Numbered from the stretch's first letter, positions 1 to 52,974 are shown. The stretch is 64,000 bases of DNA from Glycera tridactyla (GCA_965644265.1 OZ286469.1:62868001-62932000), one strand, 5' to 3'. The notes: generated from the sequence alone by a model not told the origin. Program-made: numbers and translations.

Positions 1-1020
1 TTGAAGGCTCGGAGGGCTGCTATTTTCGAGCAGGCTGCTGCTACCTCCGAGCTGATGAGAGTACGGGCTGCTGCTGCCAGTGTCACCACTTCGTCTGCTG
101 CCATTTCAAGTGCTACTACTTCTACTGCTGCTACTCCTACTGTCGGTGAGCCTAGTTCCTCTACTGCCGTTTCAAGTGCTACTACTCCTACTGCTGCTAC
201 TACTGCCTCTTCTACCCCTACCGCTACGCCTGGATCTGCTGCTACGATTTCTACTCAGACAGCCGCCGACTCGACAACCATCTCTACACAGACTTCCGAC
301 ATGGGAACTAGAGTCATCTCTACTCAGACTGCTGCGTTGCCTATTCTGTCCATGACTGCAGCTACCTCCGCTTCGTCTGCTTCGAGTGTCCCCAAGACCC
401 AGGTGCTCATCATGGGAAGCTCACACGTCGCCCGTATTCCCCTTTCAGCTTTAGACGGAGCGACCAATGTGACTTTGGCCGGGCGAGAGGGATTTACCTG
501 GTCGGAAGCCTTGCAAGTCCTGCAGGGAAAGAAGGAGCCGTCACGTGGAGATCTCTCTTCTACCTCCATCCGTGACCTAATTCTTAAGTGCAGCGTTTGT
601 GTGTTTATTTATGGATCTAATGATCTCGCTCGTAGATTTTTCGACGTAGAGAGTGGCAGAAATCGTTTTGCCACCTCAAGTGAGGTCATTCATGACATGA
701 ACTCCTTCTTATCGTATGTCGAATACCTGCGTGTGAAGTCTGGGCTGCCTATGCCGAGAATTCATGTTCTGAGCATTTTGACGCGTCCGGATTGGGATCA
801 GGAGCGGGTGAGGGCGGCCTGGCATGTGAATGAGGGAGTGGCTGCTCATCCCAGTGTAACGTCTTTGGTGGTGCCCGCCTGGTTCCATCCGGACGCACAT
901 ATTCGACCAACTACAGCTAAGGGTACTAAAGATAACAAGCATCTATATCAGCATCTGTATCCGGAGTTGTTGTATTCGATCAAGAGGGAGGTTAGAGCTT
1001 TCTCCCCTGGAGACTGGTGA
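1..1020 (+). CDS. SGNH/GDSL-type hydrolase with T/A/S-rich linker, copy A1 (5' end outside window)
   Basis: Open frame from the window start. Motifs GSSH (block I), GREG (II), GSND (III) and DNKH (V) are present. Confidence 0.8.
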   Translation: MKARRAAIFEQAAATSELMRVRAAAASVTTSSAAISSATTSTAATPTVGEPSSSTAVSSATTPTAATTASSTPTATPGSAATISTQTAADSTTISTQTSDMGTRVISTQTAALPILSMTAATSASSASSVPKTQVLIMGSSHVARIPLSALDGATNVTLAGREGFTWSEALQVLQGKKEPSRGDLSSTSIRDLILKCSVCVFIYGSNDLARRFFDVESGRNRFATSSEVIHDMNSFLSYVEYLRVKSGLPMPRIHVLSILTRPDWDQERVRAAWHVNEGVAAHPSVTSLVVPAWFHPDAHIRPTTAKGTKDNKHLYQHLYPELLYSIKREVRAFSPGDW

Positions 1021-1127
1021 ACATTCTATTTCTGCCTGTATGTCTGTTGTCTGTAAATATCCGTGCATAATATATAATCTAATGAGGCATTCGTGTTCTG
1101 GTTCTGTGTTTTTGTGTGTGATGGGTT

Positions 1128-1177
1128 TGTGTGTGTACGTGTGTGCGTGTGTGTGTGTGTGTGTGTGTATGTGTGTG
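1128..1177. repeat. Interrupted (TG)n microsatellite ~110 bp after the stop codon (one per A unit, length-variable)
   Basis: Directly visible. Length and interruptions differ between units. Confidence 0.95.
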
Positions 1178-1599
1178 CCAGTGGCTCTTGATGATAGGCT
1201 CGGTGTGCCCGAGTACTCTGTAGCTTGTATGTGGTAGTGTGGCACCTGGTGGTAGTTGCATGCATCATATTTGATCGTATGGGTTTTGTGCAATATGTGT
1301 GGCTTTGTTTACACACACACCTGTCATTTTATCTGGTTATTCTATACTGTGGAAAAATTAATTTTGGAATATTCACTATGCAGGTCTCTTGTCTTTATTG
1401 CCTGTCACTCAGCTGACCTCTACATGTGCCCCTCTCTATCTATTGAGATGCTCCAGGTGCAAAACTGGCTTTCTTGATTAAAAATTTGTTCCCTCAATCC
1501 ATGCCTTTCGGAATGTGTTTTCCTCAGCTGGAAAAGAGTCACCTCAATCTCAATAGGAGTAAAGAAGTGGTTACTCCCGTTTCCAATTAAGAGTTGAGA

Positions 1600-1666
1600 G
1601 GTTGGTTGTTGGTTGGTTGGTCCTGGTTTAACGTCTTGTCAGCACCATCTGGGCTATATTGTGACG
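1600..1666 (-). mobile_element. Possible older SINE 3'-tail remnant
   Basis: A (TTGG)n tract is followed by TTTAACGTC...GGCTATAT, the same layout as the tail of the 1877-2095 element. No target-site duplication recognised. Confidence 0.3.
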
Positions 1667-1876
1667 CCCATGCAATGGTCATGTTCAGGATCCTCCAAGA
1701 GCGACATTCTAATCCAAGAGAAAATTTGTACTAATGGAGACCATAGGATCCCTGCCGCCACCTACCCATGTCCATGTATGCACCCCAGCATTCAAACTAT
1801 TCTGCCCCTACCATAGAATTAACACGCCCCCTGCAAATGTGTGGCCACTCAAGTATGTGCTGCATGCATTAGATGG

Positions 1877-2095: not shown

Positions 2096-2106
2096 GCATT
2101 AGATGG

Positions 2107-2154: not shown

Positions 2155-2290
2155 GAACCAAACAGTTCTCGTTGAAAAGAAGGGATGACCAAACATGATG
2201 ATCTACATATCCGGAAGGTTCTGCACATCTCTGATAGGACCTAATACACTGAATCCTGACCCACTTAATTTTCCTACCATATTGTCAAGT

Positions 2291-2858: not shown

Positions 2859-3074
2859 TCAGTTCACCTCACTCCGAGGTGTTATATAACAGTTTTAAAG
2901 TAGCGCTGCGAACACCACCTCGAGATTATTCGCCTTGCTCAGGGTGTTAGGATAGGCGAGTGCTCGCTCAGTTTACCTCACTCTGAGGTGTTATATAACC
3001 GTTCTTTATGTAGTTCTGCTAACACCTTGAGAATACTCGCCTAGCTCAAGGTGTTAGGATAGGCGAGTGCTCGC
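2859..3074. repeat. Two imperfect ~108-bp direct repeats rich in inverted repeats, upstream of each promoter (A2 shown)
   Basis: Copies at 2859-2967 and 2968-3074. Each has an ACCTC..GAGGT hairpin, a GTTATATAAC palindrome, an AACACC..GGTGTT inverted repeat (perfect 13 bp at 3019-3031/3045-3057) and GCGAGTGCTCGC. Confidence 0.9.
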
Positions 3075-3158
3075 TTAGTCTAGGCGTTAAATGTCAGCTT
3101 GCCGGCTGGCTAGTGGTTCTGGCCTGGCTGTGAGTGGCTGCTCACCGTGTTAACACCT

Positions 3159-3224
3159 GGGCGGCTTCAGCCAATGAGCGCTAACTAGTGGGCATAAAAC
3201 CGGCTGTTTTTCCCTAATTCAGTC
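3159..3224 (+). promoter_or_regulatory. Putative Pol II core promoter (A2 shown; present in every unit except A13 and out-of-window A1)
   Basis: GGGCGG at 3159-3164, AGCCAATGAG with CCAAT at 3171-3175, CATAAAA at 3193-3199 and Inr-like TCAGTC at 3219-3224. The Inr A is 28 nt after the start of the TATA-like box, and there is no ATG before 3308. Confidence 0.6.
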
Positions 3225-3307: not shown

Positions 3308-4411
3308 ATGGAGTCAACAGCTGCCCTTCATCTTGCACCTGGTGGAATGCCCAGCAAGCTTGCCATGCGGGAGAAGCGACAAAGGCAGAATTTGAAGGCT
3401 CGGAGGGCTGCTATTTTCGAGCAGGCTGCTGCTACCTCCGAGCTGATGAGAGTACGGGCTGCTGCTGCCAGTGTCACCACTTCGTCTGCTGCCATTTCAA
3501 GTGCTACTACTTCTACTGCTGCTACTCCTACTGTCGGTGAGCCTAGTTCCTCTACTGCCGTTTCAAGTGCTACTACTCCTACTGCTGCTACTACTGCCTC
3601 TTCTACCCCTACCGCTACGCCTGGATCTGCTGCTACGATTTCTACTCAGACAGCCGCCGACTCGACAACCATCTCTACACAGACTTCCGACATGGGAACT
3701 AGAGTCATCTCTACTCAGACTGCTGCGTTGCCTATTCTGTCCACGACTGCAGCTACCTCCGCTTCGTCTGCTTCGAGTGTCCCCCAGACCCAGGTGCTCA
3801 TCATGGGAAGCTCACACGTCGCCCGTATTCCCCTTTCAGCTTTAGACGGAGCGACCAATGTGACTTTGGCCGGGCGAGAGGGATTTACCTGGTCGGAAGC
3901 CTTGCAAGTCCTGCAGGGAAAGAAGGAGCCGTCACGTGGAGATCTCTCTTCTACCTCCATCCGTGACCTAATTCTTAAGTGCAGCGTTTGTGTGTTTATT
4001 TATGGATCTAATGATCTCGCTCGTAGATTTTTCGACGTAGAGAGTGGCAGAAATCGTTTTGCCACCTCAAGTGAGGTCATTCATGACATGAACTCCTTCT
4101 TATCGTATGTCGAATACCTGCATGTGAAGTCTGGGCTGCCTATGCCTAGAATTCATGTTCTGAGCATTTTGACGCGTCCGGATTGGGATCAGGAGCGGGT
4201 GAGGGCGGCCTGGCATGTGAATGAGGGAGTGGCTGCTCATCCCAGTGTAACGTCTTTGGTGGTGCCCGCCTGGTTCCATCCGGACGCACATATTCGACCA
4301 ACTACAGCTAAGGGTACTAAAGATAACAAGCATCTATATCAGCATCTGTATCCGGAGTTGTTGTATTCGATCAAGAGGGAGGTTAGAGCTTTCTCCCCTG
4401 GAGACTGGTGA
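3308..4411 (+). CDS. SGNH hydrolase-domain protein, copy A2 (367 aa)
   Basis: First ATG after the Inr-like site, in strong context (actATGG); the ORF-track start at 3251 is a GTG. GSSH at 3806-3817, GSND at 4004-4015, DNKH at 4322-4333. Confidence 0.85.
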   Translation: MESTAALHLAPGGMPSKLAMREKRQRQNLKARRAAIFEQAAATSELMRVRAAAASVTTSSAAISSATTSTAATPTVGEPSSSTAVSSATTPTAATTASSTPTATPGSAATISTQTAADSTTISTQTSDMGTRVISTQTAALPILSTTAATSASSASSVPQTQVLIMGSSHVARIPLSALDGATNVTLAGREGFTWSEALQVLQGKKEPSRGDLSSTSIRDLILKCSVCVFIYGSNDLARRFFDVESGRNRFATSSEVIHDMNSFLSYVEYLHVKSGLPMPRIHVLSILTRPDWDQERVRAAWHVNEGVAAHPSVTSLVVPAWFHPDAHIRPTTAKGTKDNKHLYQHLYPELLYSIKREVRAFSPGDW

Positions 4412-6699
4412 ACATTCTATTTCTGCCTGTATGTCTGTTGTCTGTAAATATCCGTGCATAATATATAATCTAATGAGGCATTCGTGTTCTGGTTCTGTGT
4501 TTTATGTGTGTGATGGGTTTGTGTGTGTGTGTGTGTGTGCGTGTGTGTGTGTGTGTGTATGTGTGTGCCAGTGGCTCTTGATGATAGGCTCGGTGTGCCC
4601 GAGTACTCTGTAGCTTGTATGTGGTAGTGTGGCACCTGGTGGTAGTTGCATGCATCATATTTGATCGTATGGGTTTTGTGCAATATGTGTGGCTTTGTTT
4701 ACACACACACCTGTCATTTTATCTGGTTATTCTATACTGTGGAAAAATTAATTTTGGAATATTCACTATGCAGGTCTCTTGTCTTTATTGCCTGTCACTC
4801 AGCTGACCTCTACATGTGCCCCTCTCTATCTATTGAGATGCTCCAGGTGCAAAACTGGCTTTCTTGATTAAAATGTGTTCCCTCAATCCATGCCTTTCGG
4901 AATGTGTTTTCCTCAGCTGGAAAAGAGTCACCTCAATCTCAATAGGAGTAAAGAAGTGGTTACTCCCGTTTCCAATTAAGAGTTGAGAGGTTGGTTGTTG
5001 GTTGGTTGGTCCTGGTTTAACGTCTTGTCAGCACCATCTGGGCTATATTGTGACGCCCATGCAATGGTCATGTTCAGGATCCTCCAAGAGCGACATTCTA
5101 ATCCAAGAGAAAATTTGTACTAATGGAGACCATAGGATCCCTGCCGCCACCTACCCATGTCCATGTATGCACCCCAGCATTCAAACTATTCTGCCCCTAC
5201 CATAGAATTAACACGCCCCCTGCAAATGTGTGGCCACTCAAGTATGTGCTGCATGCATTAGATAGTTTGTTGTTTGTTTGTTTGTTTTAGTTTAACGTCA
5301 CTTAAACCCGCTTGGGTTATATCAGACTGAAAAACTGAAAATGCTGAAGAAAAAGAGTCACTGCATGCCGGGGGCCGTCCCTACTCTTTGCAAAAGACAG
5401 CAGTGGATCTTTAACGTGCATGAAGGAAAAGGCTCCTAAATACACGGCCGGCCTTTGATATCCCAGTTGGCATGCACTGGGTTTGCATTAGATGGATCAT
5501 CACCAATCAGATCATCTTGATCATCACCAATCAGATCATCTTGGAACCAAACAGTTCTTGTTGAAAAGAAAGGATGACCAAACATGATGATCTACATATC
5601 CGGAAGGTTCTGCACATCTCTGATAGGACCTAATACACTGAATCCTGACCCACTTAATTTTCCTACCATATTGTCAAGTTGTGTGTGTGTGTGTGTGTGT
5701 GTGTACATCTAGCTGCTCAATCGTGCCTATATCTTCAACTGATCTGAATGTACATTGATATGGCTGAAGGTACGACTGGTCAGAAACTCATATAGGGCAA
5801 AGTTTCTGAGCATGATGGCGATCCACTCGGGGATTGTGCCCCTGATCGAACATGCTGACTGGCTGAGACCTGCGAAACTATCATATCATCTACATATCAG
5901 AATTCACCAATCACATTGCATGTAAGATGGTGCATTGGCGCAGAAGGCTTGTTGTAAAAAATATGAAGCAGGGCACTGCAATTGGGATATATTTCAGTAA
6001 AACTAGGGATGCATCAATAGATTTCGGCTTAGAAATAAAGTCATCTACCCAGGGAGATAAGTTGATATATAAATAGTACATTTGAACCTGTTTACATAAC
6101 CTTTCAATGTGACCGAGAGTGGGCTGTTTCTGCATGCAGGTGACGATTGTAGCAGAAGAGCTGTCATCACAATTGTAGTGTATGTAGTGTGATATGTGTG
6201 ATTTCTTTCTAAAGTGTAACCATTCCGTTTTCCGGTTATGTCAAGTATCGTCAGTTCACCTCACTCCGAGGTGTTATATAACAGTTTTAAAGTAGCGCTG
6301 CGAACACCACCTCGAGATTATTCGCCATGCTCAGGGTGTTAGGATAGGCGAGTGCTCGCTCAGTTTACCTCACTCTGAGGTGTTATATAACCGTTCTTTA
6401 TGTAGTTCTGCTAACACCTTGAGAATACTCGCCTAGCTCAAGGTGTTAGGATAGGCGAGTGCTCGCTTAGTCTAGGCGTTAAATGTCAGCTTGCCGGCTG
6501 GCTAGTGGCTCTGGCCTGGCTGTGAGTGGCTGCTCACCGTGTTAACACCTGGGCGGCTTCAGCCAATGAGCGCTAACTAGTGGGCATAAAACCGGCTGTT
6601 TTTCCCTAATTCAGTCATACCCTGTGAAGACTCCAGCTTCCAGTGTCTACTACTGCTACTACATTGCGTCTACCTCTGCTACATCTGCTATCGTCTACT

Positions 6700-7803: not shown

Positions 7804-10115
7804 ACATTCTATTTCTGCCTGTATGTCTGTTGTCTGTAAATATCCGTGCATAATATATAATCTAATGAGGCATTCGTGTTCTGGTTCTGTGTTTTTGTGT
7901 GTGATGGGTTTGTGTGTGTGTGTGTGTGTGCGTGTGTGTGTGGGTGTGTGTGTATGTGTGTGCCAGTGGCTCTTGATGATAGGCTCGGTGTGCCCGAGTA
8001 CTCTGTAGCTTGTATGTGGTAGTGTGGCACCTGGTGGTAGTTGCATGCATCATATTTGATCGTATGGGTTTTTTGCAATATGTGTGGCTTTGTTTACACA
8101 CACACCTGTCATTTTATCTGGTTATTCTATACTGTGGAAAAATTAATTTTGGAATATTCACTATGCAGGTCTCTTGTCTTTATTGCCTGTCACTCAGCTG
8201 ACCTCTACATGTGCCCCTCTCTATCTATTGAGATGCTCCAGGTGCAAAACTGGCTTTCTTGATTAAAATGTGTTCCCTCAATCCATGCCTTTCGGAATGT
8301 GTTTTCCTCAGCTGGAAAAGAGTCACCTCAATCTCAATAGGAGTAAAGAAGTGGTTACTCCCGTTTCCAATTAAGAGTTGAGAGGTTGGTTGTTGGTTGG
8401 TTGGTCCTGGTTTAACGTCTTGTCAGCACCATCTGGGCTATATTGTGACGCCCATGCAATGGTCATGTTCAGGATCCTCCAAGAGCGACATTCTAATCCA
8501 AGAGAAAATTTGTACTAATGGAGACCATAGGATCCCTGCCGCCACCTACCCATGTCCATGTATGCACCCCAGCATTCAAACTATTCTGCCCCTACCATAG
8601 AATTAACACGCCCCCTGCAAATGTGTGGCCACTCAAGTATGTGCTGCATGCATTAGATAGTTTGTTGTTTGTTTGTTTGTTTTAGTTTAACGTCACTTAA
8701 ACCCGCTTGGGTTATATCAGACTGAAAAACTGAAAATGCTGAAGAAAAAGAGTCACTGCATGCCGGGGGCCGTCCCTACTCTTTGCAAAAGACAGCAGTG
8801 GATCTTTAACGTGCATGAAGGAAAAGGCTCCTAAATACACGGCCGGCCTTTGATATCCCAGTTGGCATGCACTGGGTTTGCATTAGATGGATCATCACCA
8901 ATCAGATCATCTTGATCATCACCAATCAGATCATCTTGGAACCAAACAGTTCTTGTTGAAAAGAAAGGATGACCAAACATGATGATCTACATATCCGGAA
9001 GGTTCTGCACATCTCTGATAGGACCTAATACACTGAATCCTGACCCACTTAATTTTCCTACCATATTGTCAAGTTGTGTGTGTGTGTGTGTGTGTACATT
9101 TAGCTGCTCAATCGTGCCTATATCTTCAACTGATCTGAATGTACATTGATATGGCTGAAGGTACGACTGGTCAGAAACTCATATAGGGCAAAGTTTCTGA
9201 GCATGATGGCGGATCCACTCGGGGATTGTGCCCCTGATCGAACATGCTGACTGGCTGAGACCTGCGAAACTATCATATCATCTACATATCAGAATTCACC
9301 AATCACATTGCATGTAAGATGGTGCATTGGCGCAGAAGGCTTGTTGTAAAAAATATGAAGCAGGGCACTGCAGTTGGGATATATTTCAGTAAAACTAGGG
9401 ATGCATCAATAGATTTCGGCTTAGAAATAAAGTCATCTACCCAGGGAGATAAGTTGATATATAAATAGTACATTTGAACCTGTTTACATAACCTTTCAAT
9501 GTGACCGAGAGTGGGCTGTTTCTGCATGCAGGTGACGATTGTAGCAGAAGAGCTGTCATCACAATTGTAGTGTATGTAGTGTGATATGTGTGATTTCTTT
9601 CTAAAGTGTAACCATTCCGTTTTCCGGTTATGTCAAGTATCGTCAGTTCACCTCACTCCGAGGTGTTATATAACAGTTTTAAAGTAGCGCTGCGAACACC
9701 ACCTCGAGATTATTCGCCTTGCTCAGGGTGTTAGGATAGGCGAGTGCTCGCTCAGTTTACCTCACTCTGAGGTGTTATATAACCGTTCTTTATGTAGTTC
9801 TGCTAACACCTTGAGAATACTCGCCTAGCTCAAGGTGTTAGGATAGGCGAGTGCTCGCTTAGTCTAGGCGTTAAATGTCAGCTTGCCGGCTGGCTAGTGG
9901 CTCTGGCCTGGCTGTGAGTGGCTCTGGCCTGGCTGTGAGTGGCTGCTCACCGTGTTAACACCTGGGCGGCTTCAGCCAATGAGCGCTAACTAGTGGGCAT
10001 AAAACCGGCTGTTTTTCCCTAATTCATCAGTCATACCCTGTGAAGACTCCAGCTTCCAGTGTCTACTACTGCTACTACATTGCGTCTACCTCTGCTACAT
10101 CTGCTATCGTCTACT

Positions 10116-11219
10116 ATGGAGTCAACAGCTGCCCTTCATCTTGCACCTGGTGGAATGCCCAGCAAGCTTGCCATGCGGGAGAAGCGACAAAGGCAGAATT
10201 TGAAGGCTCGGAGGGCTGCTATTTTCGAGCAGGCTGCTGCTACCTCCGAGCTGATGAGAGTACGGGCTGCTGCTGCCAGTGTCACCACTTCGTCTGCTGC
10301 CATTTCAAGTGCTACTACTTCTACTGCTGCTACTCCTACTGTCGGTGAGCCTAGTTCCTCTACTGCCGTTTCAAGTGCTACTACTCCTACTGCTGCTACT
10401 ACTGCCTCTTCTACCCCTACCGCTACGCCTGGATCTGCTGCTACGATTTCTACTCAGACAGCCGCCGACTCGACAACCATCTCTACACAGACTTCCGACA
10501 TGGGAACTAGAGTCATCTCTACTCAGATTGCTGCGTTGCCTATTCTGTCCACGACTGCAGCTACCTCCGCTTCGTCTGCTTCGAGTGTCCCCCAGACCCA
10601 GGTGCTCATCATGGGAAGCTCACACGTCGCCCGTATTCCCCTTTCAGCTTTAGACGGAGCGACCAATGTGACTTTGGCCGGGCGAGAGGGATTTACCTGG
10701 TCGGAAGCCTTGCAAGTCCTGCAGGGAAAGAAGGAGCCGTCACGTGGAGATCTCTCTTCTACCTCCATCCGTGACCTAATTCTTAAGTGCAGCGTTTGTG
10801 TGTTTATTTATGGATCTAATGATCTCGCTCGTAGATTTTTCGACGTAGAGAGTGGCAGAAATCGTTTTGCCACCTCAAGTGAGGTCATTCATGACATGAA
10901 CTCCTTCTTATCGTATGTCGAATACCTGCATGTGAAGTCTGGGCTGCCTATGCCTAGAATTCATGTTCTGAGCATTTTGACGCGTCCGGATTGGGATCAG
11001 GAGCGGGTGAGGGCGGCCTGGCATGTGAATGAGGGAGTGGCTGCTCATCCCAGTGTAACGTCTTTGGTGGTGCCCGCCTGGTTCCATCCGGACGCACATA
11101 TTCGACCAACTACAGCTAAGGGTACTAAAGATAACAAGCATCTATATCAGCATCTGTATCCGGAGTTGTTGTATTCGATCAAGAGGGAGGTTAGAGCTTT
11201 CTCCCCTGGAGACTGGTGA
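10116..11219 (+). CDS. SGNH hydrolase-domain protein, copy A4
   Basis: Intact 367-aa frame. Confidence 0.85.
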   Translation: MESTAALHLAPGGMPSKLAMREKRQRQNLKARRAAIFEQAAATSELMRVRAAAASVTTSSAAISSATTSTAATPTVGEPSSSTAVSSATTPTAATTASSTPTATPGSAATISTQTAADSTTISTQTSDMGTRVISTQIAALPILSTTAATSASSASSVPQTQVLIMGSSHVARIPLSALDGATNVTLAGREGFTWSEALQVLQGKKEPSRGDLSSTSIRDLILKCSVCVFIYGSNDLARRFFDVESGRNRFATSSEVIHDMNSFLSYVEYLHVKSGLPMPRIHVLSILTRPDWDQERVRAAWHVNEGVAAHPSVTSLVVPAWFHPDAHIRPTTAKGTKDNKHLYQHLYPELLYSIKREVRAFSPGDW

Positions 11220-13510
11220 ACATTCTATTTCTGCCTGTATGTCTGTTGTCTGTAAATATCCGTGCATAATATATAATCTAATGAGGCATTCGTGTTCTGG
11301 TTCTGTGTTTTTGTGTGTGATGGGTTTGTGTGTGTGTGTGTGTGCGTGTGTGTGTGGGTGTGTGTGTATGTGTGTGCCAGTGGCTCTTGATGATAGGCTC
11401 GGTGTGCCCGAGTACTCTGTAGCTTGTATGTGGTAGTGTGGCACCTGGTGGTAGTTGCATGCATCATATTTGATCGTATGGGTTTTGTGCAATATGTGTG
11501 GCTTTGTTTACACACACACCTGTCATTTTATCTGGTTATTCTATACTGTGGAAAAATTAATTTTGGAATATTCACTATGCAGGTCTCTTGTCTTTATTGC
11601 CTGTCACTCAGCTGACCTCTACATGTGCCCCTCTCTATCTATTGAGATGCTCCAGGTGCAAAACTGGCTTTCTTGATTAAAATGTGTTCCCTCAATCCAT
11701 GCCTTTCGGAATGTGTTTTCCTCAGCTGGAAAAGAGTCACCTCAATCTCAATAGGAGTAAAGAAGTGGTTACTCCCGTTTCCAATTAAGAGTTGAGAGGT
11801 TGGTTGTTGGTTGGTTGGTCCTGGTTTAACGTCTTGTCAGCACCATCTGGGCTATATTGTGACGCCCATGCAATGGTCATGTTCAGGATCCTCCAAGAGC
11901 GACATTCTAATCCAAGAGAAAATTTGTACTAATGGAGACCATAGGATCCCTGCCGCCACCTACCCATGTCCATGTATGCACCCCAGCATTCAAACTATTC
12001 TGCCCCTACCATAGAATTAACACGCCCCCTGCAAATGTGTGGCCACTCAAGTATGTGCTGCATGCATTAGATGGTTTGTTGTTTGTTCGTTTGTTTTAGT
12101 TTAACGTCACTTAAACCCGCTTGGGTTATATCGGACTGAAAAACTGAAAATGCTGAAGAAAAAGAGTCACTGCATGCCGGGGGCCGTCCCTACTCTTTGC
12201 GAAAGACAGCAGTGGATCTTTAACGTGCGTGAAGGAAAAGGCTCCTAAATACACGGCCGGCCTTTGATATCCCAGTCGGCATGCACTGGGTTTGCATTAG
12301 ATGGATCATCACCAATCAGATCATCTTGATCATCACCAATCAGATCATCTTGGAACCAAACAGTTCTTGTTGAAAAGAAAGGATGACCAAACATGATGAT
12401 CTACATATCCGGAAGGTTCTGCACATCTCTGATAGGACCTAATACACTGAATCCTGACCCACTTAATTTTCCTACCATATTGTCAAGTTGTGTGTGTGTG
12501 TGTGTGTGTGTACATTTAGCTGCTCAATCGTGCCTATATCTTCAACTGATCTGAATGTACATTGATATGGCTGAAGGTACGACTGGTCAGAAACTCATAT
12601 AGGGCAAAGTTTCTGAGCATGATGGCGGATCCACTCGGGGATTGTGCCCCTGATCGAACATGCTGACTGGCTGAGACCTGCGAAACTATCATATCATCTA
12701 CATATCAGAATTCACCAATCACATTGCATGTAAGATGGTGCATTGGCGCAGAAGGCTTGTTGTAAAAAATATGAAGCAGGGCACTGCAATTGGGATATAT
12801 TTCAGTAAAACTAGGGATGCATCAATAGATTTCGGCTTAGAAATAAAGTCATCTACCCAGGGAGATAAGTTGATATATAAATAGTACATTTGAACCTGTT
12901 TACATAACCTTTCAATGTGACCGAGAGTGGGCTGTTTCTGCATGCAGGTGACGATTGTAGCAGAAGAGCTGTCATCACAATTGTAGTGTATGTAGTGTGA
13001 TATGTGTGATTTCTTTCTAAAGTGTAACCATTCCGTTTTCCGGTTATGTCAAGTATCGTCAGTTCACCTCACTCCGAGGTGTTATATAACAGTTTTAAAG
13101 TAGCGCTGCGAACACCACCTCGAGATTATTCGCCTTGCTCAGGGTGTTAGGATAGGCGAGTGCTCGCTCAGTTTACCTCACTCTGAGGTGTTATATAACC
13201 GTTCTTTATGTAGTTCTGCTAACACCTTGAGAATACTTGCCTAGCTCAAGGTGTTAGGATAGGCGAGTGCTCGCTTAGTCTAGGCGTTAAATGTCAGCTT
13301 GCCGGCTGGCTAGTGGCTCTGGCCTGGCTGTGAGTGGCTGCTCACCGTGTTAACACCTGGGCGGCTTCAGCCAATGAGCGCTAACTAGTGGGCATAAAAC
13401 CGGCTGTTTTTCCCTAATTCATCAGTCATACCCTGTGAAGACTCCAGCTTCCAGTGTCTACTACTGCTACTACATTGCGTCTACCTCTGCTACATCTGCT
13501 ATCGTCTACT

Positions 13511-21419: not shown

Positions 21420-21526
21420 ACATTCTATTTCTGCCTGTATGTCTGTTGTCTGTAAATATCCGTGCATAATATATAATCTAATGAGGCATTCGTGTTCTGG
21501 TTCTGTGTTTTTGTGTGTGATGGGTT

Positions 21527-21557
<31 letters not shown>

Positions 21558-35022: not shown

Positions 35023-35126
35023 ACATTCTATTTCTGCCTGTATGTCTGTTGTCTGTAAATATCCGTGCATAATATATAATCTAATGAGGCATTCGTGTTC
35101 TGGTTCTGTGTTTTTGTGTGTGATGG

Positions 35127-35164
<38 letters not shown>

Positions 35165-40728: not shown

Positions 40729-43031
40729 ACATTCTATTTCTGCCTGTATGTCTGTTGTCTGTAAATATCCGTGCATAATATATAATCTAATGAGGCATTC
40801 GTGTTCTGGTTCTGTGTTTTTGTGTGTGATGGGTTTGTGTGTGTGTGTGTGTGTGTGCGTGTGCGTGTGTGTGTGTGTGTATGTGTGTGCCAGTGGCTCT
40901 TGATGATAGGCTCGGTGTGCCCGAGTACTCTGTAGCTTGTATGTGGTAGTGTGGCACCTGGTGGTAGTTGCATGCATCATATTTGATCGTATGGGTTTTG
41001 TGCAATATGTGTGGCTTTGTTTACACACACACCTGTCATTTTATCTGGTTATTCTATACTGTGGAAAAATTAATTTTGGAATATTCACTATGCAGGTCTC
41101 TTGTCTTTATTGCCTGTCACTCAGCTGACCTCTACATGTCCCCCTCTCTATCTATTGAGATGCTCCAGGTGCAAAACTGGCTTTCTTGATTAAAATGTGT
41201 TCCCTCAATCCATGCCTTTCGGAATGTGTTTTCCTCAGCTGGAAAAGAGTCACCTTAATCTCAATAGGAGTAAAGAAGTGGTTACTCCCGTTTCCAATTA
41301 AGAGTTGAGAGGTTGGTTGTTGGTTGGTTGGTCCTGGTTTAACGTCTTGTCAGCACCATCTGGGCTATATTGTGACGCCCATGCAATGGTCATGTTCAGG
41401 ATCCTCCAAGAGCGACATTCTAATCCAAGAGAAAATTTGTACTAATGGAGACCATAGGATCCCTGCCGCCACCTACCCATGTCCATGTATGCACCCCAGC
41501 ATTCAAACTATTCTGCCCCTACCATAGAATTAACACGCCCCCTGCAAATGTGTGGCCACTCAAGTATGTGCTGCATGCATTAGATGGTTTGTTGTTTGTT
41601 TGTTTGTTTTAGTTTAACGTCACTTAAACCCGCTTGGGTTATATCGGACTGAAAAACTGAAAATGCTGAAGAAAAAGAGCCACTGCATGCCGGGGGCCGT
41701 CCCTACTCTTTGCGAAAGACAGCAGTGGATCTTTAACGTGCGTGAAGGAAAAGGCTCCTAAATACACGGCCGGCCTTTGATATCCCAGTCGGCATGCACT
41801 GGGTTTGCATTAAATGGATCATCACCAATCAGATCATCTTGATCATCACCAATCAGATCATCTTGGAACCAAACAGTTCTTGTTGAAAAGAAAGGATGAC
41901 CAAACATGATGATCTACATATCCGGAAGGTTCTGCACATCTCTGATAGGACCTAATACACTGAATCCTGACCCACTTAATTTTCCTACCATATTGTCAAG
42001 TTGTGTGTGTGTGTGTGTGTGTGTGTACATTTAGCTGCTCAATTGTGCCTATATCTTCAACTGATCTGAATGTACATTGATATGGCTGAAGGTACGACTG
42101 GTCAGAAACTCATATAGGGCAAAGTTTCTGAGCATGATGGCGGATCCACTCGGGGATTGTGCCCCTGATCGAACATGCTGACTGGCTGAGACCTGCGAAA
42201 CTATCATATCATCTACATATCAGAATTCACCAATCACATTGCATGTAAGATGGTGCATTGGCGCAGAAGGCTTGTTGTAAAAAATATGAAGCAGGGCACT
42301 GCAATTGGGATATATTTCAGTAAAACTAGGGATGCATCAATAGATTTCGGCTTAGAAATAAAGTCATCTACCCAGGGAGATAAGTTGATATATAAATAGT
42401 ACATTCGAACCTGTTTACATAGCCCACTCTCGGTCACATTGAAAGGTTGTTTCTGCATGCAGGTGACGATTGTAGCAGAAGAGCTGTCATCACAATTGTA
42501 GTGTATGTAGTGTGATATGTGTGATTTCTTTCTAAAGTGTAACCATTCCGTTTTCCGGTTATGTCAAGTATCGTCAGTTCACCTCACTCCGAGGTGTTAT
42601 ATAACAGTTTTAAAGTAGCGCTGCGAACACCACCTCGAGATTATTCGCCTTGCTCAGGGTGTTAGGATAGGCGAGTGCTCGCTCAGTTTACCTCACTCTG
42701 AGGTGTTATATAACCGTTCTTTATGTAGTTCTGCTAACACCTTGAGAATACTCGCCTAGCTCAAGGTGTTAGGATAGGCGAGTGCTCGCTTAGTCTAGGC
42801 GTTAAATGTCAGCTTGCCGGCTGGCTAGTGGCTCTGGCCTGGCTGTGAGTGGCTGCTCACCGTGTTAACACCTGGGCGGCTTCAGCCAATGAGCGCTAAC
42901 TAGTGGGCATAAAACCGGCTGTTTTTCCCTAATTCAGTCATACCCTGTGAAGACTCCAGCTTCCAGTGTCTACTACTGCTACTACTGCTACTACATTGCG
43001 TCTACCTCTGCTACATCTGCTATCGTCTACT

Positions 43032-47537: not shown

Positions 47538-49824
47538 ACATTCTATTTCTGCCTGTATGTCTGTTGTCTAAGTATCCGTGCATAATATATAATCTGATGA
47601 GGCATTCGTGTTCTGGTTCTGTGTTTTCGTGTGTGATGGGTTTGTATGTGTGTGTGTGCGTGTGTGTGCGTGTGTGTGTGTGTGTGTATATGTGTGTGCC
47701 AGTGGCTCTTGATGATAGGCTCGGTGTGCCCGAGTACTCTGTAGCTTGTATGTGGTAGTGTGGCACCTGGTGGTAGTTGCATGCATCATATTTGATCGTA
47801 TGGGTTTTGTGCAATATGTGTGGCTTTGTTTACACACACACCTGTCATTTTATCTGGTTATTCTATACTGTGGAAAAATTAATTTTGGAATATTCACTAT
47901 GCAGGTCTCTTGTCTTTATTGTCTGTCACTCAGCTGACCTCTACATGTGCCCCTCTCTATCTATTGAGATGCTCCAGGTGCAAAACTGGCTTTCTTGATT
48001 AAAATGTGTTCCCTCAATCCATGCCTTTCGGAATGTGTTTTCCTCAGCTGGAAAAGAGTCACCTTAATCTCAATAGGAGTAAAGAAGTGGTTACTCCCGT
48101 TTCCAATTAAGAGTTGAGAGGTTGGTTGTTGGTTGGTTGGTCCTGGTTTAACGTCTTGTCAGCACCATCTGGGCTATATTGTGACGCCCATGCAATGGTC
48201 ATGTTCAGGATCCTCCAAGAGCGACATTCTAATCCAAGAGAAAATTTGTACTAATGGAGACCATAGGATCCCTGCCGCCACCTACCCATGTCCATGTATG
48301 CACCCCAGCATTCAAACTATTCTGCCCCTACCATAGAATTAACAAGCCCCCTGCAAATGTGTGGCCACTCAAGTATGTGCTGCATGCATTAGATGGTTTG
48401 TTGTTTGTTTGTTTGTTTTAGTTTAACGTCACTTAAACCCGCTTGGGTTATATCGGACTGAAAAACTGAAAATGCTGAAGAAAAAGAGTCACTGCATGCC
48501 GGGGGCCGTCCCTACTCTTTGCGAAAGACAGCAGTGGATCTTCAACGTGCGTGAAGGAAAAGGCTCCTGAATACACGGCCGGCCTTTGATATCCCAGTCG
48601 GCATGCACTGGGTTTGCATTAGATGGATCATCACCAATCAGATCATCTTGATCATCACCAATCAGATCATCTTGGAACCAGTTCTTGTGGAAAAGAAAGG
48701 ATGACCAAACATGATGATCTACATATCTGGAAGGTTCTGCACATCTCTGATAGGACCTAATACACTGAATCCTGACCCACTTAATTTTCCTACCATATTG
48801 TCAAGTTGTGTGTGTGTGTGTGTGTGTGTGTACATTTAGCTGCTCAATCGTGCCTATATCTTCAACTGATCTGAATGTACATTGATATGGCTGAAGGTAC
48901 GACTGGTCAGAAACTCATATAGGGCAAAGTTTCTGAGCATGATGGCGGATCCACTCGAGGATTGTGCCCCTGATAGAACATGCTGACTGGCTGAGACCTG
49001 CGAAACTATCATATCATCTACATATCAGAATTCACCAATCACATTGCATGTAAGATGGTGCATTGGCGCAGAAGGCTTGTTGTAAAAAATATGAAGCAGG
49101 GCACTGCAATTGGGATATATTTCAGTAAAACTAGGGATGCATCAATAGATTTCGGCTTAGAAATAAAGTCATTTACCCAGGGAGATAAGTTGATATATAA
49201 ATAGTACATTCGAACCTGTTTACATAGCCCACTCTCGGTCACATTGAAAGGTTGTTTCTGCATGCAGGTGACGATTGTAGCAGAAGAGCTGTCATCACAA
49301 TTGTAGTGTATGTAGTGTGATATGTGCGATTTCTTTCTAAAGTGTAACCATTCCGTTTTCCGGTTATGTCAAGTATCGTCAGTTTACCTCACTCCGAGGT
49401 GTTATAACAGTTTTAAAGTAGCGCTGCTAACACCTCGAGATTATTCGCCTTGCTCAGGGTGTTAGGATAGGCGAGTGCTCGCTCAGTTTACCTCACTCTG
49501 AGGTGTTATCTAACCGTTCTTTATGTAGTTCTGCTAACACCTTGAGAATACTCGCCTAGCTCAAGGTGTTAGGATAGGCGAGTGCTCGCTTAGTCTAGGC
49601 GTGAAGTGTCAGCTTGCCAGCTGGCTAGTGGCTCTGGCCTGGCTGTGAGTGGCTGCTCACCGTGTTTAACACCTGGGCGGCTTCAGCCAATGAGCGCTAA
49701 CTAGTGGGCATAAAACCGGCTGTTTTTCCCTAATTCAGTCATACCCTGTGAAGACTTCCAGCTTCCAGTGTCTACTACTCCTACTACATTGCGTCTACCT
49801 CTGCTACATCTGCTATCGTCTACT

Positions 49825-50928
49825 ATGGAGTCAACAGCTGCCCTTCATCTTGCACCTGGTGGAATGCCCAGCAAGCTTGCGAAGCTGAAGAAGCGACAAA
49901 GGCAGAATTTGAAGGCTCAGAGGGCTGCTAATTTCGAGCAGGCAGCTGCTATCTCCGAGCTGATGAGAGTACGGGCTGCTGCTGCCAGTGTCACCACTTC
50001 GTCTGCTGCCATTTCAAGTGCTACTACTTCTACTGCTGCTACTCCTACTGTCGGTGTCCCTAGTTCCTCTACTGCCGTTTCCAGTGCTACTACTCCTACT
50101 GCTGCTACTACTGCCTCTTCTACGCCTACCGCTACGCCTAGATCTGCTGCTACGATTTCTCCTCAGACAGCCGCCGACTCGACAACCATCTCTACACAGA
50201 CTTCCGACGTGGGAACTAAAGTCATCTCTACTCAGACTGCTGCGTTGCCTATTCTGTCCACGACTGCAGCTACCTCCGCTTCGTCTGCTTCGAGTGTCCC
50301 CCAGACCCAGGTGCTCATCATGGGAAGCTCACACGTCGCCCGTATTCCCCTTTCAGCTTTAGACGGAGCGACCAATGTGACTTTGGCCGGGCGAGAGGGA
50401 TTTACCTGGTCGGAAGCCTTGCAAGTCCTGCAGGGAGAGAAGGAGCCGTCACGTGGAGATCTCTCTTCTACCTCTATGCGTGACCTAATTCTTAAGTGCA
50501 GCGTTTGTGTGTTTATTTATGGATCTAATGATCTCGCTCGTAGATTTTTCGACATAGAGAGTGGCAGAAATCGTTTTGCCACCTCAAGTGAGGTCATTCA
50601 TGACATGAACTCCTTCTTATCGTATGTCGAATACCTGCGTGTGAAGTCTGGGCTGCCTATGCCTAGAATTTATGTTCTGAGCATTTTGACGCGTCCGGAT
50701 TGGGACCAGGAGTGGGTGAGGGCGGCCTGGCATGTGAATGAGGGAGTGGCTGCTCATCCCAGTGTAACGTCTTTGGTGGTGCCCGCCTGGTTCCATCCGG
50801 ACGCACATATTCGACCAACTACAGCTAAGGGTACTAAAGATAACAAGCATCTATATCAGCATCTGTATCCCGAGTTGTTGTATTCGATCAAGAGGGAGGT
50901 TAGGGCTTTCTCCCCAGGAGACTGGTGA
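49825..50928 (+). CDS. SGNH hydrolase-domain protein, copy A16 (most divergent copy)
   Basis: Intact frame with multiple substitutions (e.g. AKLKKRQR N-terminus). Catalytic motifs retained. Confidence 0.85.
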   Translation: MESTAALHLAPGGMPSKLAKLKKRQRQNLKAQRAANFEQAAAISELMRVRAAAASVTTSSAAISSATTSTAATPTVGVPSSSTAVSSATTPTAATTASSTPTATPRSAATISPQTAADSTTISTQTSDVGTKVISTQTAALPILSTTAATSASSASSVPQTQVLIMGSSHVARIPLSALDGATNVTLAGREGFTWSEALQVLQGEKEPSRGDLSSTSMRDLILKCSVCVFIYGSNDLARRFFDIESGRNRFATSSEVIHDMNSFLSYVEYLRVKSGLPMPRIYVLSILTRPDWDQEWVRAAWHVNEGVAAHPSVTSLVVPAWFHPDAHIRPTTAKGTKDNKHLYQHLYPELLYSIKREVRAFSPGDW

Positions 50929-52018
50929 ACATTCTATTTCTGCCTGTATGTCTGTTGTCTGTAAATATCCGTGCATAATATATAATCTAATGAGGCATTC
51001 GTGTTCTGGTTCTGTGTTTTTGTGTGTGATGGGTTTGTGTGTGTGTGTGTGTACGTGTGTGTGTGCTTGTGTGTGTGTGTGTATGTGTATGTGTGCCAGT
51101 GGCTCTTGATGATAGGCTCGGTGTGCCCGAGTACTCTGTAGTTTGTATGTGGTAGTGAGGCACCTGGTGGTAGTTGCATGCATCATATTTGATCGTATGG
51201 GTTTTGTGCAATATGTGTGGCTTTGTTTACACACACACACACCTGTCATTTTATCTGGTTATTCTATACTGTGGAAAAATAAATTTTGGAATATTCACTA
51301 TGCAGGTCTCTTGTCTTTATTGCCTGTCACTCAGCTGACCTCTACATGTGCCCCTCTCTATCTATTGAGATGCTCCAGGTGCAAAACTGGCTTTCTTGAT
51401 TAAAATGTGTTCCCCCAATCCATGCCTTCCGGAATGTGTTTTCCTCAGCTGGAAAAGAGTCACCTTAATCTCAATAGGAGTAAAGAAGTGGTTACTACCG
51501 TTTCCAATTAAGAGTTGAGAGGTTGGTTGTTGGTTGGTTGGTCCTGGTTTAACGTCTTGTCAGCACCATCTGGGCTATATTGTGACGCCCATGCAATGGT
51601 CATGTTCAGGATCCTCCAAGAGCGACATTCTAATCCAAGAGAAAATTTGTACCAATGGAGACCATAGGATCCCTGCCGCCACCTACCCATGTCCATGTAT
51701 GCACCCCAGCATTCAAACTATTCTGCCCCTACCATAGAATTAACACGCCCCCTACAAATGTGTGGCCACTCAAGTATGTGCTGCATGCATTAGATGGATC
51801 ATCACCAATCAGATCATCTTGGAACCAAACAGTTCTTGTGGAAAAGAAAGGATGACCAAACATGATGATCTACATATCCGGAAGGTTCTGCACATCTCTG
51901 ATAGGACCTAATACACTGAATCCTGACCCAATTAATTTTCCTACCATATGGTCAAGTTGTGTGTGTGTGTACATTTAGCTGCTCAATCGTGCCTATATCT
52001 TCAACTGATCTGAATGTA

Positions 52019-52974
52019 CATTGATATGGCTGGAGGTACGACTGGTCAGAAACTCATATAGGGCAAAGTTTCTGAGCATGATGGCGGATCCACTCGGGGA
52101 TTGTGCCCCTGATCGAACATGCTGACTGGCTGAGACCTGCGAAACTATCATATCATCTACATATCAGAATTCACCAATCACATTGCATGTAAGATGGTGC
52201 ATTGGCGCAGAAGGCTTGTTGTAAAAAATATGAAGCAGGGCACTGCAATTGGGATATATTTCAGTAAAACTAGGGATGCATCAATAGATTTCGGCTTAGA
52301 AATAAGGTCATTTACACAGGGAGATAAGTTGATATATAAATAGTACATTCGTACCTGTTCACATAGCCCACTCTCGGTCACATTGAAAGGTTGTTTCTGC
52401 ATGCAGGTGACGATTATAGCAGAAGAGCTGTCATCACAATTACAGTCAAACCTGTGTGAGACCACCCTACAGTTATACAGGGCACACCTGGTTGGTCGGT
52501 TGGTAGGTTCATTGATATGGCTGAAGATACGACTGGACAGAAACTCATATAGGGCAAAGTTTCTGAGCATGATGGCGGATTCACTTGGGGATTGTTCCCC
52601 TGATCGAACATGCTGACTGGCTGAGACCTGAGAAACTATTATATCATCTACATATCAGAATTTACCAATCACATTGCATGTGAGATGGTGCATTGGCGCA
52701 GAAGGCTTGTTGTAAAAAATATGAAGCAGGGCACTGCAATTGGGATATATTTCAGTGAAACTAGGGATGCATCAATAGATTTCGGCTTAGAAATAAGGTC
52801 GTTTACCCAGGGAGATAAGTTGATGTATAAATAGTACATTCGAACAAAGCCCACTCTCGGTCACATTGAAAGGTTGTTTCTGCATGCAGGTGACGATTGT
52901 AGCAGAAGAGCTGTCATCACAATTACAGTCGAACCTGTGTGAGACCACCCTACAGTTATACAGGGCACACCTGG
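52019..52974 (+). repeat. Diverged ~470-bp direct duplication at the end of array A (52019-52491 and 52510-52974)
   Basis: Both copies run from CATTGATATGGCTG to CAGGGCACACCTGG, with scattered substitutions and an indel. Confidence 0.9.
52441..52466 (+). mobile_element. Possible Tc1/mariner/pogo-type MITE terminal fragment (second copy about 52924)
   Basis: TA followed by CAGTCAAACCTG...ACCACC resembles pogo-like TIR starts (TA|CAGT...). No partner TIR is seen in the window. Confidence 0.3.

What the first reader, a model, noticed from the sequence alone, without database searches (positions are those of the whole stretch)
1..52441. Protein-coding macrosatellite: 16 tandem 3.4-kb units, each a complete intronless SGNH-hydrolase gene cassette
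Seen: every unit carries promoter-like elements and a 367-aa ORF, 13 full copies are intact, and S-G-N-H blocks I, II, III and V (GSSH, GREG, GSND, DNKH) are all present. Established: SGNH hydrolases use these four blocks, and the human D4Z4 macrosatellite is the textbook case of a ~3.3-kb repeat carrying an intronless ORF. Inference: this is a copy-number-variable gene array, comparable in layout but not homologous to D4Z4, amplified for dosage or as a selfish element. No autonomous transposition gene was recognised in the window.
Basis: partly seen in the sequence, partly recalled or inferred. Interest (0 to 1): 0.85.

Follow-up and report, generated by a model that had tools for sequence, protein, structure and literature searches.

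The report
Tandem array of esterase genes
This invertebrate genome holds at least 16 head-to-tail, near-identical 3.4-kb copies of one intronless gene for a small serine esterase built like the esterase proteins of jumping genes (LINEs); the array is real and the enzyme fold is confirmed, but gene-carrying arrays of this kind are already known.

Summary
Window 1-52441 is a head-to-tail array of 16 units of 3.39-3.42 kb, 97-99.4% identical. Thirteen units carry an intact 367-aa ORF, and all thirteen keep the motifs GSSH, GREG, GSND and DNKH. An AlphaFold model built on 11 relatives (pLDDT 86) matches SGNH hydrolases (Foldseek prob 1.0, best PAF-AH Ib alpha; VIA Z 16-17). Pfam does not recognise the protein itself.

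The array grew by unequal crossing-over, not transposition:
- A SINE-like insert with a 10-bp target duplication is in 15 units but not the edge unit.
- A 4-unit block is duplicated.
- Divergence rises towards the edge.
- Junctions carry no poly(A), telomeric repeats or reverse transcriptase.

Next to it, a second 3-kb array (53246-64000) holds an old paralog (64% aa identity; pN 0.25, pS 0.85). Relatives in metagenome contigs also sit in tandem.

The protein has a basic N-terminal helix, a Ser/Thr/Ala-rich linker and a C-terminal esterase, like esterase-type LINE ORF1 proteins. It lacks their reported signature histidine and has no linked RT. I read it as a locus-resident gene family, possibly transposon-derived. 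It is a new member of a known kind (compare RS447/USP17, TAF11-like, D4Z4). Expression, copy-number variation and enzyme activity are untested. The scan noted LINE-borne esterases elsewhere in this genome, but I found no note of another array like this.

The parts
1..52441 (+). Array 1: 16 head-to-tail units of 3.39-3.42 kb. The first unit is cut by the window edge, so the array may be longer.
3308..4411 (+). Representative gene A: intronless 367-aa ORF plus stop. Aa 1-60 are basic (pI 11.6, arginine-rich helix [17 protein letters not shown]...). Aa 61-160 are a linker with 70% Ser/Thr/Ala. Aa 161-367 are the SGNH esterase domain.
3788..4408 (+). SGNH esterase domain of gene A, with blocks GSSH, GREG, GSND, DNKH and a C-terminal PGDW.
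   Evidence: AF2 pLDDT 86.3; Foldseek prob 1.0; VIA Z 16-17; motifs in all 13 intact copies
3171..3199 (+). CCAAT box (3171-3175) and TATA-like CATAAAA (3193-3199) upstream of the ATG. Both contexts are identical in all 14 units with an upstream region.
   Evidence: read from sequence only
2859..3079 (+). Doubled 107-bp element with internal inverted repeats upstream of each gene. Function unknown.
   Evidence: the copy at 6251-6471 folds with z -3.5
5264..5483 (-). SINE-like insert with an (AAAC)n tail, flanked by the 10-bp target duplication TGCATTAGAT (5254-5263 and 5484-5493). Present in 15 units, absent from unit 16.
10059..37265 (+). Higher-order repeat: the 4-unit block 10059-23659 is duplicated as 23660-37265. 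The paired units differ by 1, 1, 4 and 1 substitutions.
23660..24484 (+). Copy whose ORF is cut short by a nonsense codon (E256*). Its whole 3.4-kb unit differs from its twin unit at 10059 by a single substitution.
39703..42965 (+). 5'-truncated unit. A deletion junction at 39700/39703 joins unit position 2430 to position 136. It has no promoter or start codon and carries two stop codons.
49768..52441 (+). Edge unit 16: most divergent (97.3% and 93.9% identity in its two blocks), lacks the SINE-like insert, ORF still intact. The array ends at unit position 2924.
52507..52924 (+). Older partial duplicate of unit positions 2500-2924 (90% identity) together with its ~50-bp right flank.
53246..64000 (+). 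Array 2: 3.6 units of ~2.99 kb, 96-98.5% identical, cut by the window edge.
56840..57601 (+). Paralog B: 253 codons from TTG, with no arginine-rich N-terminus, 64% aa identity to the A domain. Other copies are at 53810 (truncated), 59814 and 62750. One copy has YGSDD and two have MSSSH.
54584..56320 (+). Paralog C fragment (Ser/Thr linker plus the N-terminal half of the esterase), followed by a frame-broken Ulp1/C48-protease-like ORF. The same piece occurs in each array 2 unit.
   Evidence: Pfam PF02902 at E 0.04-0.09; atlas C48 clusters at score 0.86

Best explanation
This is a genuine tandem array of at least 16 copies of an intronless gene cassette: promoter-like region, 367-aa ORF and 3' region with SINE debris.

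The protein has no signal peptide. It consists of an arginine-rich basic helix, a ~100-aa Ser/Thr/Ala-rich disordered linker and a C-terminal SGNH-fold serine esterase with Ser, Gly, Asn, Asp and His in place. It is most likely an active intracellular acyl- or acetyl-esterase.

The array was built and is kept uniform by unequal crossing-over at an old esterase gene cluster, not by transposition. Three paralog lineages (A, B, C) lie side by side, and two of them were amplified separately into 3.4-kb and 3.0-kb arrays.

The family behaves as a locus-resident gene family under long-term purifying selection. Its layout copies that of esterase-type (type IV) LINE ORF1 proteins, so it probably descends from a transposon-borne esterase that lost its reverse transcriptase.

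Shown here: the array, the fold, the motifs, the mode of growth and selection between paralogs. Inferred: enzyme activity, expression, transposon ancestry and any dosage role.
For: Array and intact ORFs.

SGNH fold:
- AF2 on the 11-sequence alignment gives pLDDT 86.3 and pTM 0.84.
- Foldseek against the PDB gives 146 hits at E <= 1e-3. The top hits are PAF-AH Ib alpha and GDSL esterases at prob 1.0.
- VIA-align gives Z 16-17 over ~165-175 residues.
- The best ESM Atlas fold match is a mollusc SGNH cluster, TM 0.71.
- Seven of 11 family members hit Pfam GDSL models at E ~3e-4.
- The catalytic Ser, Gly, Asn, Asp and His sit in invariant or nearly invariant columns of the family alignment.

Unequal crossing-over:
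- The SINE-like insert with its target duplication is shared by 15 units but absent from the edge unit.
- A 4-unit block is duplicated with only 1-4 differences.
- Differences rise from ~10 in the core to 31-56 at the edge.
- There is an internal deletion junction.
- There is no poly(A), telomeric repeat, Rfam family or RT.

Selection:
- A vs B: pN 0.253, pS 0.849.
- Relatives: omega 0.16-0.19.
- Within the array there are 0 indel columns in the ORF against 73 outside it, and 16 against 28 variable sites per kb.
- The only promoter-less copy carries two stop codons.

Tandem habit elsewhere: contigs L003 and L004 carry a 244-aa paralog without catalytic residues (hhalign prob 96.7%) 2.04 kb upstream of a 252-aa esterase.

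ORF1p-like layout:
- Basic N-terminus (pI 11.6), linker, then esterase.
- The 252-aa relatives have an arginine-rich helix directly before the esterase.
- This matches the description in PMC3905857.
- The nearest language-model clusters are eukaryotic 'hypothetical' GDSL-like proteins of Chordata and Mollusca.
Against: - Pfam does not recognise protein A at all, and no solved SGNH structure is found by sequence. The fold call therefore rests on a predicted model.
- Among the young copies the nonsynonymous:synonymous count is 12:6 and codon positions are hit 6:6:6. Current selection on array copies is not shown.
- Copies of paralog B carry changes in motif blocks.
- The histidine reported as specific to transposon esterases (H191, four residues before the block III Asn) is Val or Ile in all 11 family members.
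- The esterase domain is less basic than that of ZfL2-1 (pI 8.6 against 10.8).
- No RT lies on the same strand near any family member.
- There are no transcript, methylation or population data.
- Only about 7 relatives exist among 5.8 billion protein clusters, so family-level inference is thin.
Confidence: 0.6

Rival explanations
1. It is an ordinary cellular SGNH esterase gene family with no transposon ancestry, expanded in tandem as many invertebrate gene families are. The basic N-terminus would be a nuclear-localisation or RNA-binding tail of a host protein.
For: - The family lacks the transposon-specific His.
- It has no linked RT on the same strand.
- The structural neighbours are cellular PAF-AH and bacterial esterases.
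- Purifying selection is long-term and the paralogs stay at one locus.
- A relative may contain an intron.
Against: - The layout of arginine-rich helix, linker and esterase is the one described for LINE ORF1 proteins.
- The family is multi-copy and sits next to LINE pieces in relatives.
- The nearest language-model clusters are poorly annotated eukaryotic 'hypothetical' GDSL-like proteins, not PAF-AH.
- According to unchecked scan notes, this genome is rich in LINE-borne esterases.
Confidence: 0.28
2. The units are copies of a non-autonomous mobile element: either an ORF1-only LINE derivative stacked head to tail like Drosophila HeT-A, or a Helitron-type multimer that captured the esterase.
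For: - The protein has an ORF1p-like layout.
- A (TG)n tract lies just after the stop codon.
- Array 2 carries a PIF1-like motif and a Ulp1-like relic.
- GDSL esterases are accessory genes of giant retroelements that form head-to-tail arrays (PMC6431247).
Against: - All junctions are the same and lie at one point in the unit. There is no poly(A), no variable 5' truncation and no telomeric repeat.
- There is no RT, Rep or Rfam ribozyme.
- The PIF1-like piece has no Pfam support.
- The unit end does not end in the Helitron CTRR consensus.
- The SINE pattern, the block duplication and the divergence gradient fit recombination.
Confidence: 0.07
3. The array, or its copy number, is an assembly artefact, for example repeat over-expansion by a long-read assembler.
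For: Pairs of units differ by only 1-4 bases over a 13.6-kb duplicated block. Nothing in the window can verify the copy number.
Against: - Units carry structured, shared variants: a 21-bp indel in three units, a 9-bp insert in one, a SINE-free edge unit, a deletion junction and a divergence gradient.
- A second, independent array of a diverged paralog adjoins it.
Confidence: 0.05

Closest known systems
Human RS447 megasatellite carrying USP17, and the TAF11-like macrosatellite (PMC5687341)
   Same: Units of 3.4-4.7 kb lie head to tail. Each has its own promoter and one intronless ORF, which in RS447 encodes an enzyme. TAF11-like units also hold transposon fragments, as these units hold SINE debris.
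   Different: The gene, the lineage and the organism are unrelated. Copy-number polymorphism, promoter activity and protein function are shown for RS447 but untested here.
Human D4Z4 macrosatellite carrying DUX4
   Same: It is a ~3.3-kb tandem unit with an intronless ORF in every unit (PMC5687341).
   Different: D4Z4 is GC-rich, subtelomeric, heterochromatic and encodes a homeobox factor. There is no homology, and nothing here points to epigenetic silencing of the same type beyond CpG decay.
Esterase-type (type IV) ORF1 proteins of CR1, L2, RTE, RTEX and Penelope-like retroelements, e.g. zebrafish ZfL2-1 ORF1p, PDB 4c1a and 4c1b (PMC3905857; PMC4120745)
   Same: Both have an N-terminal helix with an arginine-rich motif, a poorly conserved linker and a C-terminal SGNH esterase with Ser, Gly, Asn, Asp and His. 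Neither has a signal peptide or an RRM. PAF-AH and 3p94 are among the best structural templates for both.
   Different: There is no ORF2 or RT downstream. The signature His four residues before the block III Asn is Val or Ile. The domain is ~205 aa against ~165 aa. It is less basic. No sequence-level match to 4c1b was found.
PAF acetylhydrolase Ib alpha subunits (PDB 1vyh, 1bwq, 3dt6)
   Same: They are the best Foldseek matches (E 1e-7, prob 1.0; VIA Z 16.1-16.4). Both are SGNH-fold intracellular esterases.
   Different: Identity is only 16-18%, and PAF-AH has no basic N-terminus or linker. A shared fold does not establish the substrate.

Membership tests
SGNH/GDSL hydrolase superfamily | Block I Ser, block II Gly, block III Asn, block V Asp-x-x-His | tested here: met
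   GSSH, GREG, GSND and DNKH are present in all 13 intact copies. These residues sit in invariant or nearly invariant columns of the 11-member alignment.
SGNH/GDSL hydrolase superfamily | Flavodoxin-like alpha/beta/alpha SGNH fold | tested here: met
   The AF2 model has pLDDT 86.3. Foldseek finds 146 PDB hits at E <= 1e-3, the top ones all SGNH at prob 1.0. VIA Z is 16-17. This is a predicted model, not a solved structure.
SGNH/GDSL hydrolase superfamily | Passes the curated Pfam threshold for PF00657 or PF13472 | tested here: not met
   Protein A has no hit. Seven of 11 relatives hit at E ~3e-4, about 20-21 bits for the two relatives scored, below the cut-offs of 23.6 and 32.9 bits.
SGNH/GDSL hydrolase superfamily | Ester hydrolysis that depends on the block I Ser | not testable with these tools
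   This needs recombinant protein, p-nitrophenyl esters and a Ser-to-Ala control.
Esterase-type (type IV) ORF1p of non-LTR retrotransposons | N-terminal coiled coil or arginine-rich motif, variable linker, C-terminal esterase, no RRM | tested here: met
   The N-terminal 60 aa have pI 11.6 with an Arg/Lys-rich stretch, followed by a 100-aa linker and the esterase. The relatives show the same layout without the long linker. A coiled coil itself was not predicted or tested.
Esterase-type (type IV) ORF1p of non-LTR retrotransposons | Transposon-specific buried pair His191/Ser228 (ZfL2-1 numbering), with the His four residues before the block III Asn | tested here: not met
   The position four residues before the Asn is Ile in protein A and Val in the other ten family members (numbering). 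The Ser228 equivalent could not be placed. The family has its own invariant His135 and Ser168 on strands 4 and 5, whose contact is untested.
Esterase-type (type IV) ORF1p of non-LTR retrotransposons | Followed on the same strand by an ORF2 with endonuclease and reverse transcriptase | tested here: not met
   The window holds no RT. In relatives L004 and L005 an RT/RNase H ORF lies downstream on the opposite strand.
Protein-coding macrosatellite (D4Z4, RS447, TAF11-like type) | Kilobase-scale units in head-to-tail tandem, high identity between units, one ORF per unit | tested here: met
   16 units of 3.39-3.42 kb at 97-99.4% identity, one ORF per unit.
Protein-coding macrosatellite (D4Z4, RS447, TAF11-like type) | Copy number varies between individuals | not testable with these tools
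   This needs population long reads or read depth. The recent 4-unit duplication shows ongoing unequal exchange, which makes variation likely.
Head-to-tail retroelement arrays (HeT-A/TART type, Terminons) | Junctions with poly(A) or telomeric repeats, variable 5' truncation, RT in cis or trans | tested here: not met
   All full-length junctions are identical. There are no A or T runs of 12 or more, no telomeric repeats, no hammerhead or other Rfam family, and no RT.
Helitron or Helentron multimers | Rep/PIF1-type helicase, 3' hairpin with a CTRR end | tested here: not met
   The PIF1-like motif at 53437-53568 has no Pfam hit. The unit end ...CATCACAATT does not end in CTRR. A 3' hairpin was not looked for.

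The most novel reading that the evidence does not exclude
A retrotransposon ORF1-type esterase escaped from its reverse transcriptase and has survived as a selected, tandemly amplified resident gene family in at least two organisms. The array might then supply or counteract LINE esterase function in trans, for example as a dominant-negative restriction factor against the many esterase-bearing LINEs of this genome. In that case the recurrent convergent LINE next to the gene in relatives would not be chance.
Probability: 0.15. Interest if true: 0.75.

Novelty: new member of a known kind. Interest (0 to 1): 0.4.

Why it matters
The finding shows that enzyme-coding macrosatellites, described mainly in humans (USP17, DUX4, TAF11-like), also occur in an invertebrate. 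It also defines a very sparsely sampled SGNH subfamily, with about seven relatives among 5.8 billion protein clusters.

The function of transposon-borne esterases is still unsettled. A membrane or lipid role has been proposed (PMC3905857). If this family derives from such an esterase, a stand-alone, highly amplified and possibly expressed copy would offer a convenient handle for biochemistry and for asking whether hosts co-opt these esterases.

As it stands, this is a well-documented but not surprising tandem gene array.

Tried and rejected
- Sequence searches for relatives. phmmer of the domain against 1.84 billion representatives gave 3 hits. Word-indexed searches gave 0 hits, then 4, then 5. 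A metagenome locus scan returned only two contigs already in hand. tblastn against phage records gave nothing.
- Sequence link to solved structures, including ZfL2-1 esterase 4c1b. None was found with the single protein, two profiles or a relative. 4c1b was not among the top 50 fold matches, so the signature residues could only be checked by motif spacing.
- Single-sequence AF2 model. It was weak (pLDDT 63) with marginal Foldseek hits, and was replaced by the alignment-based model.
- RT or other domains hidden in the unit. None was found.
- Structured RNAs, tRNA, telomeric repeats and poly(A). None was found.
- PIF1-helicase relic in array 2. It has no Pfam support and stands only on an 'AVGDLMQLSPV' motif.
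- Naming the source organisms of the related contigs through papers. No hits.
- The supplementary alignment of Schneider et al. The stored text is garbled by machine reading. I used it only for the HxGxND pattern, which the residue numbers in the main text confirm.
- Comparison with this genome's own LINE esterases. It was not possible, because other windows cannot be read and the look-up by sequence was blank.

Full report

Yes. A 40-nt anchor from the ORF start recurs 14 times at spacings of 3390-3416 bp. BLASTN of one unit against the window gives full-length matches at 97.3-99.4% identity. It also shows a copy cut by the left window edge, a 5'-truncated copy at 39703-42965 and an array end at 52441. 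That makes 16 units. The window has no N runs.

- **ORFs.** Thirteen ORFs of 386 codons from GTG are intact.
- **Motifs.** All thirteen keep MGSSH, AGREG, YGSND, DNKH and the C-terminal PGDW.
- **Broken copies.** The copy at 23660 has one nonsense codon. The copy at 39703 lacks the promoter and the first 45 codons and has two stop codons.
- **Promoter-like elements.** A CCAAT context and a CATAAAA context upstream of the ATG are letter-identical in all 14 units that have an upstream region. This shows conservation, not function.

**2. What the protein is**

Pfam finds nothing credible in the protein, and no solved structure matches it by sequence.

Exhaustive phmmer against 1.84 billion representatives found only three relatives. 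Profile searches added four 251-252-aa proteins. All come from short metagenome-type contigs.

An AlphaFold model built on the 11-sequence alignment A2 reached pLDDT 86.3 and pTM 0.84. The single-sequence model had reached only 63. The better model matches SGNH hydrolases clearly:
- Foldseek finds 146 PDB hits at E <= 1e-3. The best are PAF acetylhydrolase Ib alpha and GDSL esterases at probability 1.0.
- VIA-align gives Z 16-17.
- The best ESM Atlas fold match is a mollusc SGNH cluster, TM 0.71.
- Seven of the 11 family members give sub-threshold Pfam GDSL hits at E ~3e-4.

The catalytic Ser, Gly, Asn, Asp and His sit in invariant or nearly invariant columns of the family alignment. The SGNH assignment is therefore supported at the fold and motif level. 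Enzyme activity is inferred.

The rest of the protein is a basic N-terminus (pI 11.6, [17 protein letters not shown]...) and a 100-aa linker with 70% Ser/Thr/Ala. By inspection there is no hydrophobic signal-peptide-like N-terminus.

**3. How the array arose**

Four observations point to unequal crossing-over and none to transposition.
- **A shared insert.** A 220-bp SINE-like insert on the minus strand, with an (AAAC)n tail and the 10-bp target duplication TGCATTAGAT, is present in 15 units. It is cleanly absent from the edge unit. One unit therefore took the insert and was then amplified.
- **A duplicated block.** The four units at 10059-23659 recur as 23660-37265 with 1, 1, 4 and 1 substitutions. 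This is a recent 13.6-kb higher-order duplication.
- **A divergence gradient.** Core units differ by roughly 1-16 substitutions and the last two full-length units by 31-56. The cut edge unit and the partial copy beyond it fall to 94% and 90% identity.
- **Uniform junctions.** All full junctions are identical, and one internal junction is a simple deletion.

The window has no A or T runs of 12 or more, no telomeric repeats and no Rfam family. It has no RT or other recognisable domain in the remaining 2.2 kb of the unit.

CpG is depleted (observed/expected 0.48-0.69). Of 83 substitutions within the array, 29 are CpG-context transitions. The array is therefore probably methylated in the germline.

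**4. The locus is an old esterase cluster**

Array 1 is followed at 53246-64000 by a second array of ~2.99-kb units that are 96-98.5% identical. Each unit holds:
- **Paralog B:** 253 codons, 64% aa identity to the A domain.
- **Paralog C:** a truncated copy with a Ser/Thr linker and the N-terminal half of the esterase.
- **A protease relic:** a frame-broken Ulp1/C48-like ORF.

Between A and B, pN is 0.253 and pS is 0.849, which is saturated. Relatives give omega 0.16-0.19. The family has therefore evolved as a protein for a long time.

Among the young copies of array 1, selection is not demonstrable:
- The nonsynonymous:synonymous count is 12:6, and codon positions are hit 6:6:6.
- The ORF does have 0 indel columns against 73 outside it, and fewer variable sites.
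- The only promoter-less copy is the only one with two stop codons.

Copies of paralog B carry motif changes, YGSDD in one and MSSSH in two, and one copy is truncated. Array 2 may be decaying.

**5. Relatives**

Contigs L003 and L004 overlap at both ends. They show a 244-aa paralog that has lost the catalytic residues (hhalign probability 96.7% against A2). It lies 2.04 kb upstream of a 252-aa esterase, and each gene is followed by a 46-nt direct repeat. Tandem organisation is therefore a habit of the family.

In L004 and in the unrelated contig L005, a LINE RT/RNase H ORF lies downstream of the esterase on the opposite strand. The two LINE ORFs are 38% identical. The convergent orientation rules out the esterase being that LINE's ORF1. 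I could not tell whether the recurrence is chance, an insertion preference or something else.

**6. Comparison with what is known**

*Layout.* The closest parallels are human protein-coding macrosatellites (PMC5687341):
- RS447: 4.7 kb, USP17 deubiquitinase, own promoter.
- TAF11-like: 3.4 kb, an ORF plus transposon fragments.
- D4Z4: DUX4.

*Protein.* The layout is the one Schneider et al. describe for esterase-bearing LINE ORF1 proteins: a coiled coil or arginine-rich motif, a poorly conserved linker, then the esterase. Unchecked scan notes say this genome is rich in LINE-borne esterases. Membership nevertheless fails on two tested features.
- The transposon-specific His191, four residues before the block III Asn, is Val or Ile in all 11 members.
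- No ORF2 follows on the same strand.

The domain is also longer than LINE esterases (~205 against ~165 aa) and less basic (pI 8.6 against 10.8).

I therefore do not file it as a LINE ORF1p. It has the layout of one, and it may descend from one. GDSL esterases are also accessory genes of giant Terminon retroelements that form arrays, but nothing here shows their hallmarks.

**7. Verdict**

The array is real and well structured, and it encodes a probable active SGNH esterase from a very sparsely sampled subfamily. It was amplified by unequal crossing-over at an old multi-paralog locus.

It is a new member of a known kind, a protein-coding macrosatellite or tandem gene family. The open and more interesting possibility is transposon ancestry with host co-option. 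Expression, copy-number polymorphism, enzyme activity and assembly correctness remain untested.

Noticed in passing
window 53246-64000: A second macrosatellite of ~2.99-kb units, 96-98.5% identical. Each unit carries esterase paralog B, a truncated paralog C and a frame-broken Ulp1/C48-protease-like ORF that keeps His, Asp, Gln and Cys motif residues (HWVEGH, WDS, QNNSTDCG).
   Followed up: partly
window 53437-53568 (+), repeated in each array 2 unit: The motif 'IIAVGDLMQLSPV' resembles helicase motif III of PIF1 and Helitron helicases.
   Followed up: partly
window 6095-6119 versus 52372-52396 and 52845-52869: A 25-bp micro-inversion. Core units read CCTTTCAATGTGACCGAGAGTGGGC, whereas the edge unit and the partial copy carry the exact reverse complement.
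   Followed up: no
window 2859-3079 and the same place in every unit (e.g. 6251-6471): A doubled 107-bp element with several alternative inverted repeats lies ~230-450 nt upstream of each ATG. As RNA it folds at -74.3 kcal/mol (z -3.5, 0 of 200 shuffles as good). It has no Rfam match and its function is unknown.
   Followed up: partly
L004:3047-4123 (-) and L005:998-3628 (-): In two different organisms a LINE RT/RNase H ORF (38% identical between them) lies downstream of an esterase family member in convergent orientation. It could be chance, an insertion preference or a composite unit.
   Followed up: partly
L003:2178-2912 (+): A 244-aa paralog of the esterase has lost the catalytic residues (LLLGDD, YGRDD, NGDL). 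It sits 2.04 kb upstream of an intact 252-aa esterase, forming a tandem pair with a pseudo-enzyme.
   Followed up: yes
L005:82-95: Homology to the esterase begins directly after a 'tatcag' acceptor-like site, and the N-terminal half of the gene is missing from the 90 nt upstream. This relative may have an intron between blocks II and III.
   Followed up: no
window 3638-3721 (linker of gene A): There are three ISTQT repeats in the disordered linker, the TQT anchor type bound by dynein light chain LC8. They are also present in paralog C. Not tested.
   Followed up: no
window 1-52441: 35% of substitutions within the array (29 of 83) are CpG-context transitions, and CpG observed/expected is 0.48-0.69. 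The array is probably methylated in the germline.
   Followed up: partly
window 4985-5050: A second, older SINE-like fragment with a (GGTT)n start and the same 'GGTTTAACGTC' motif as the insert at 5264-5483. The BLASTN match covers it in all units.
   Followed up: no
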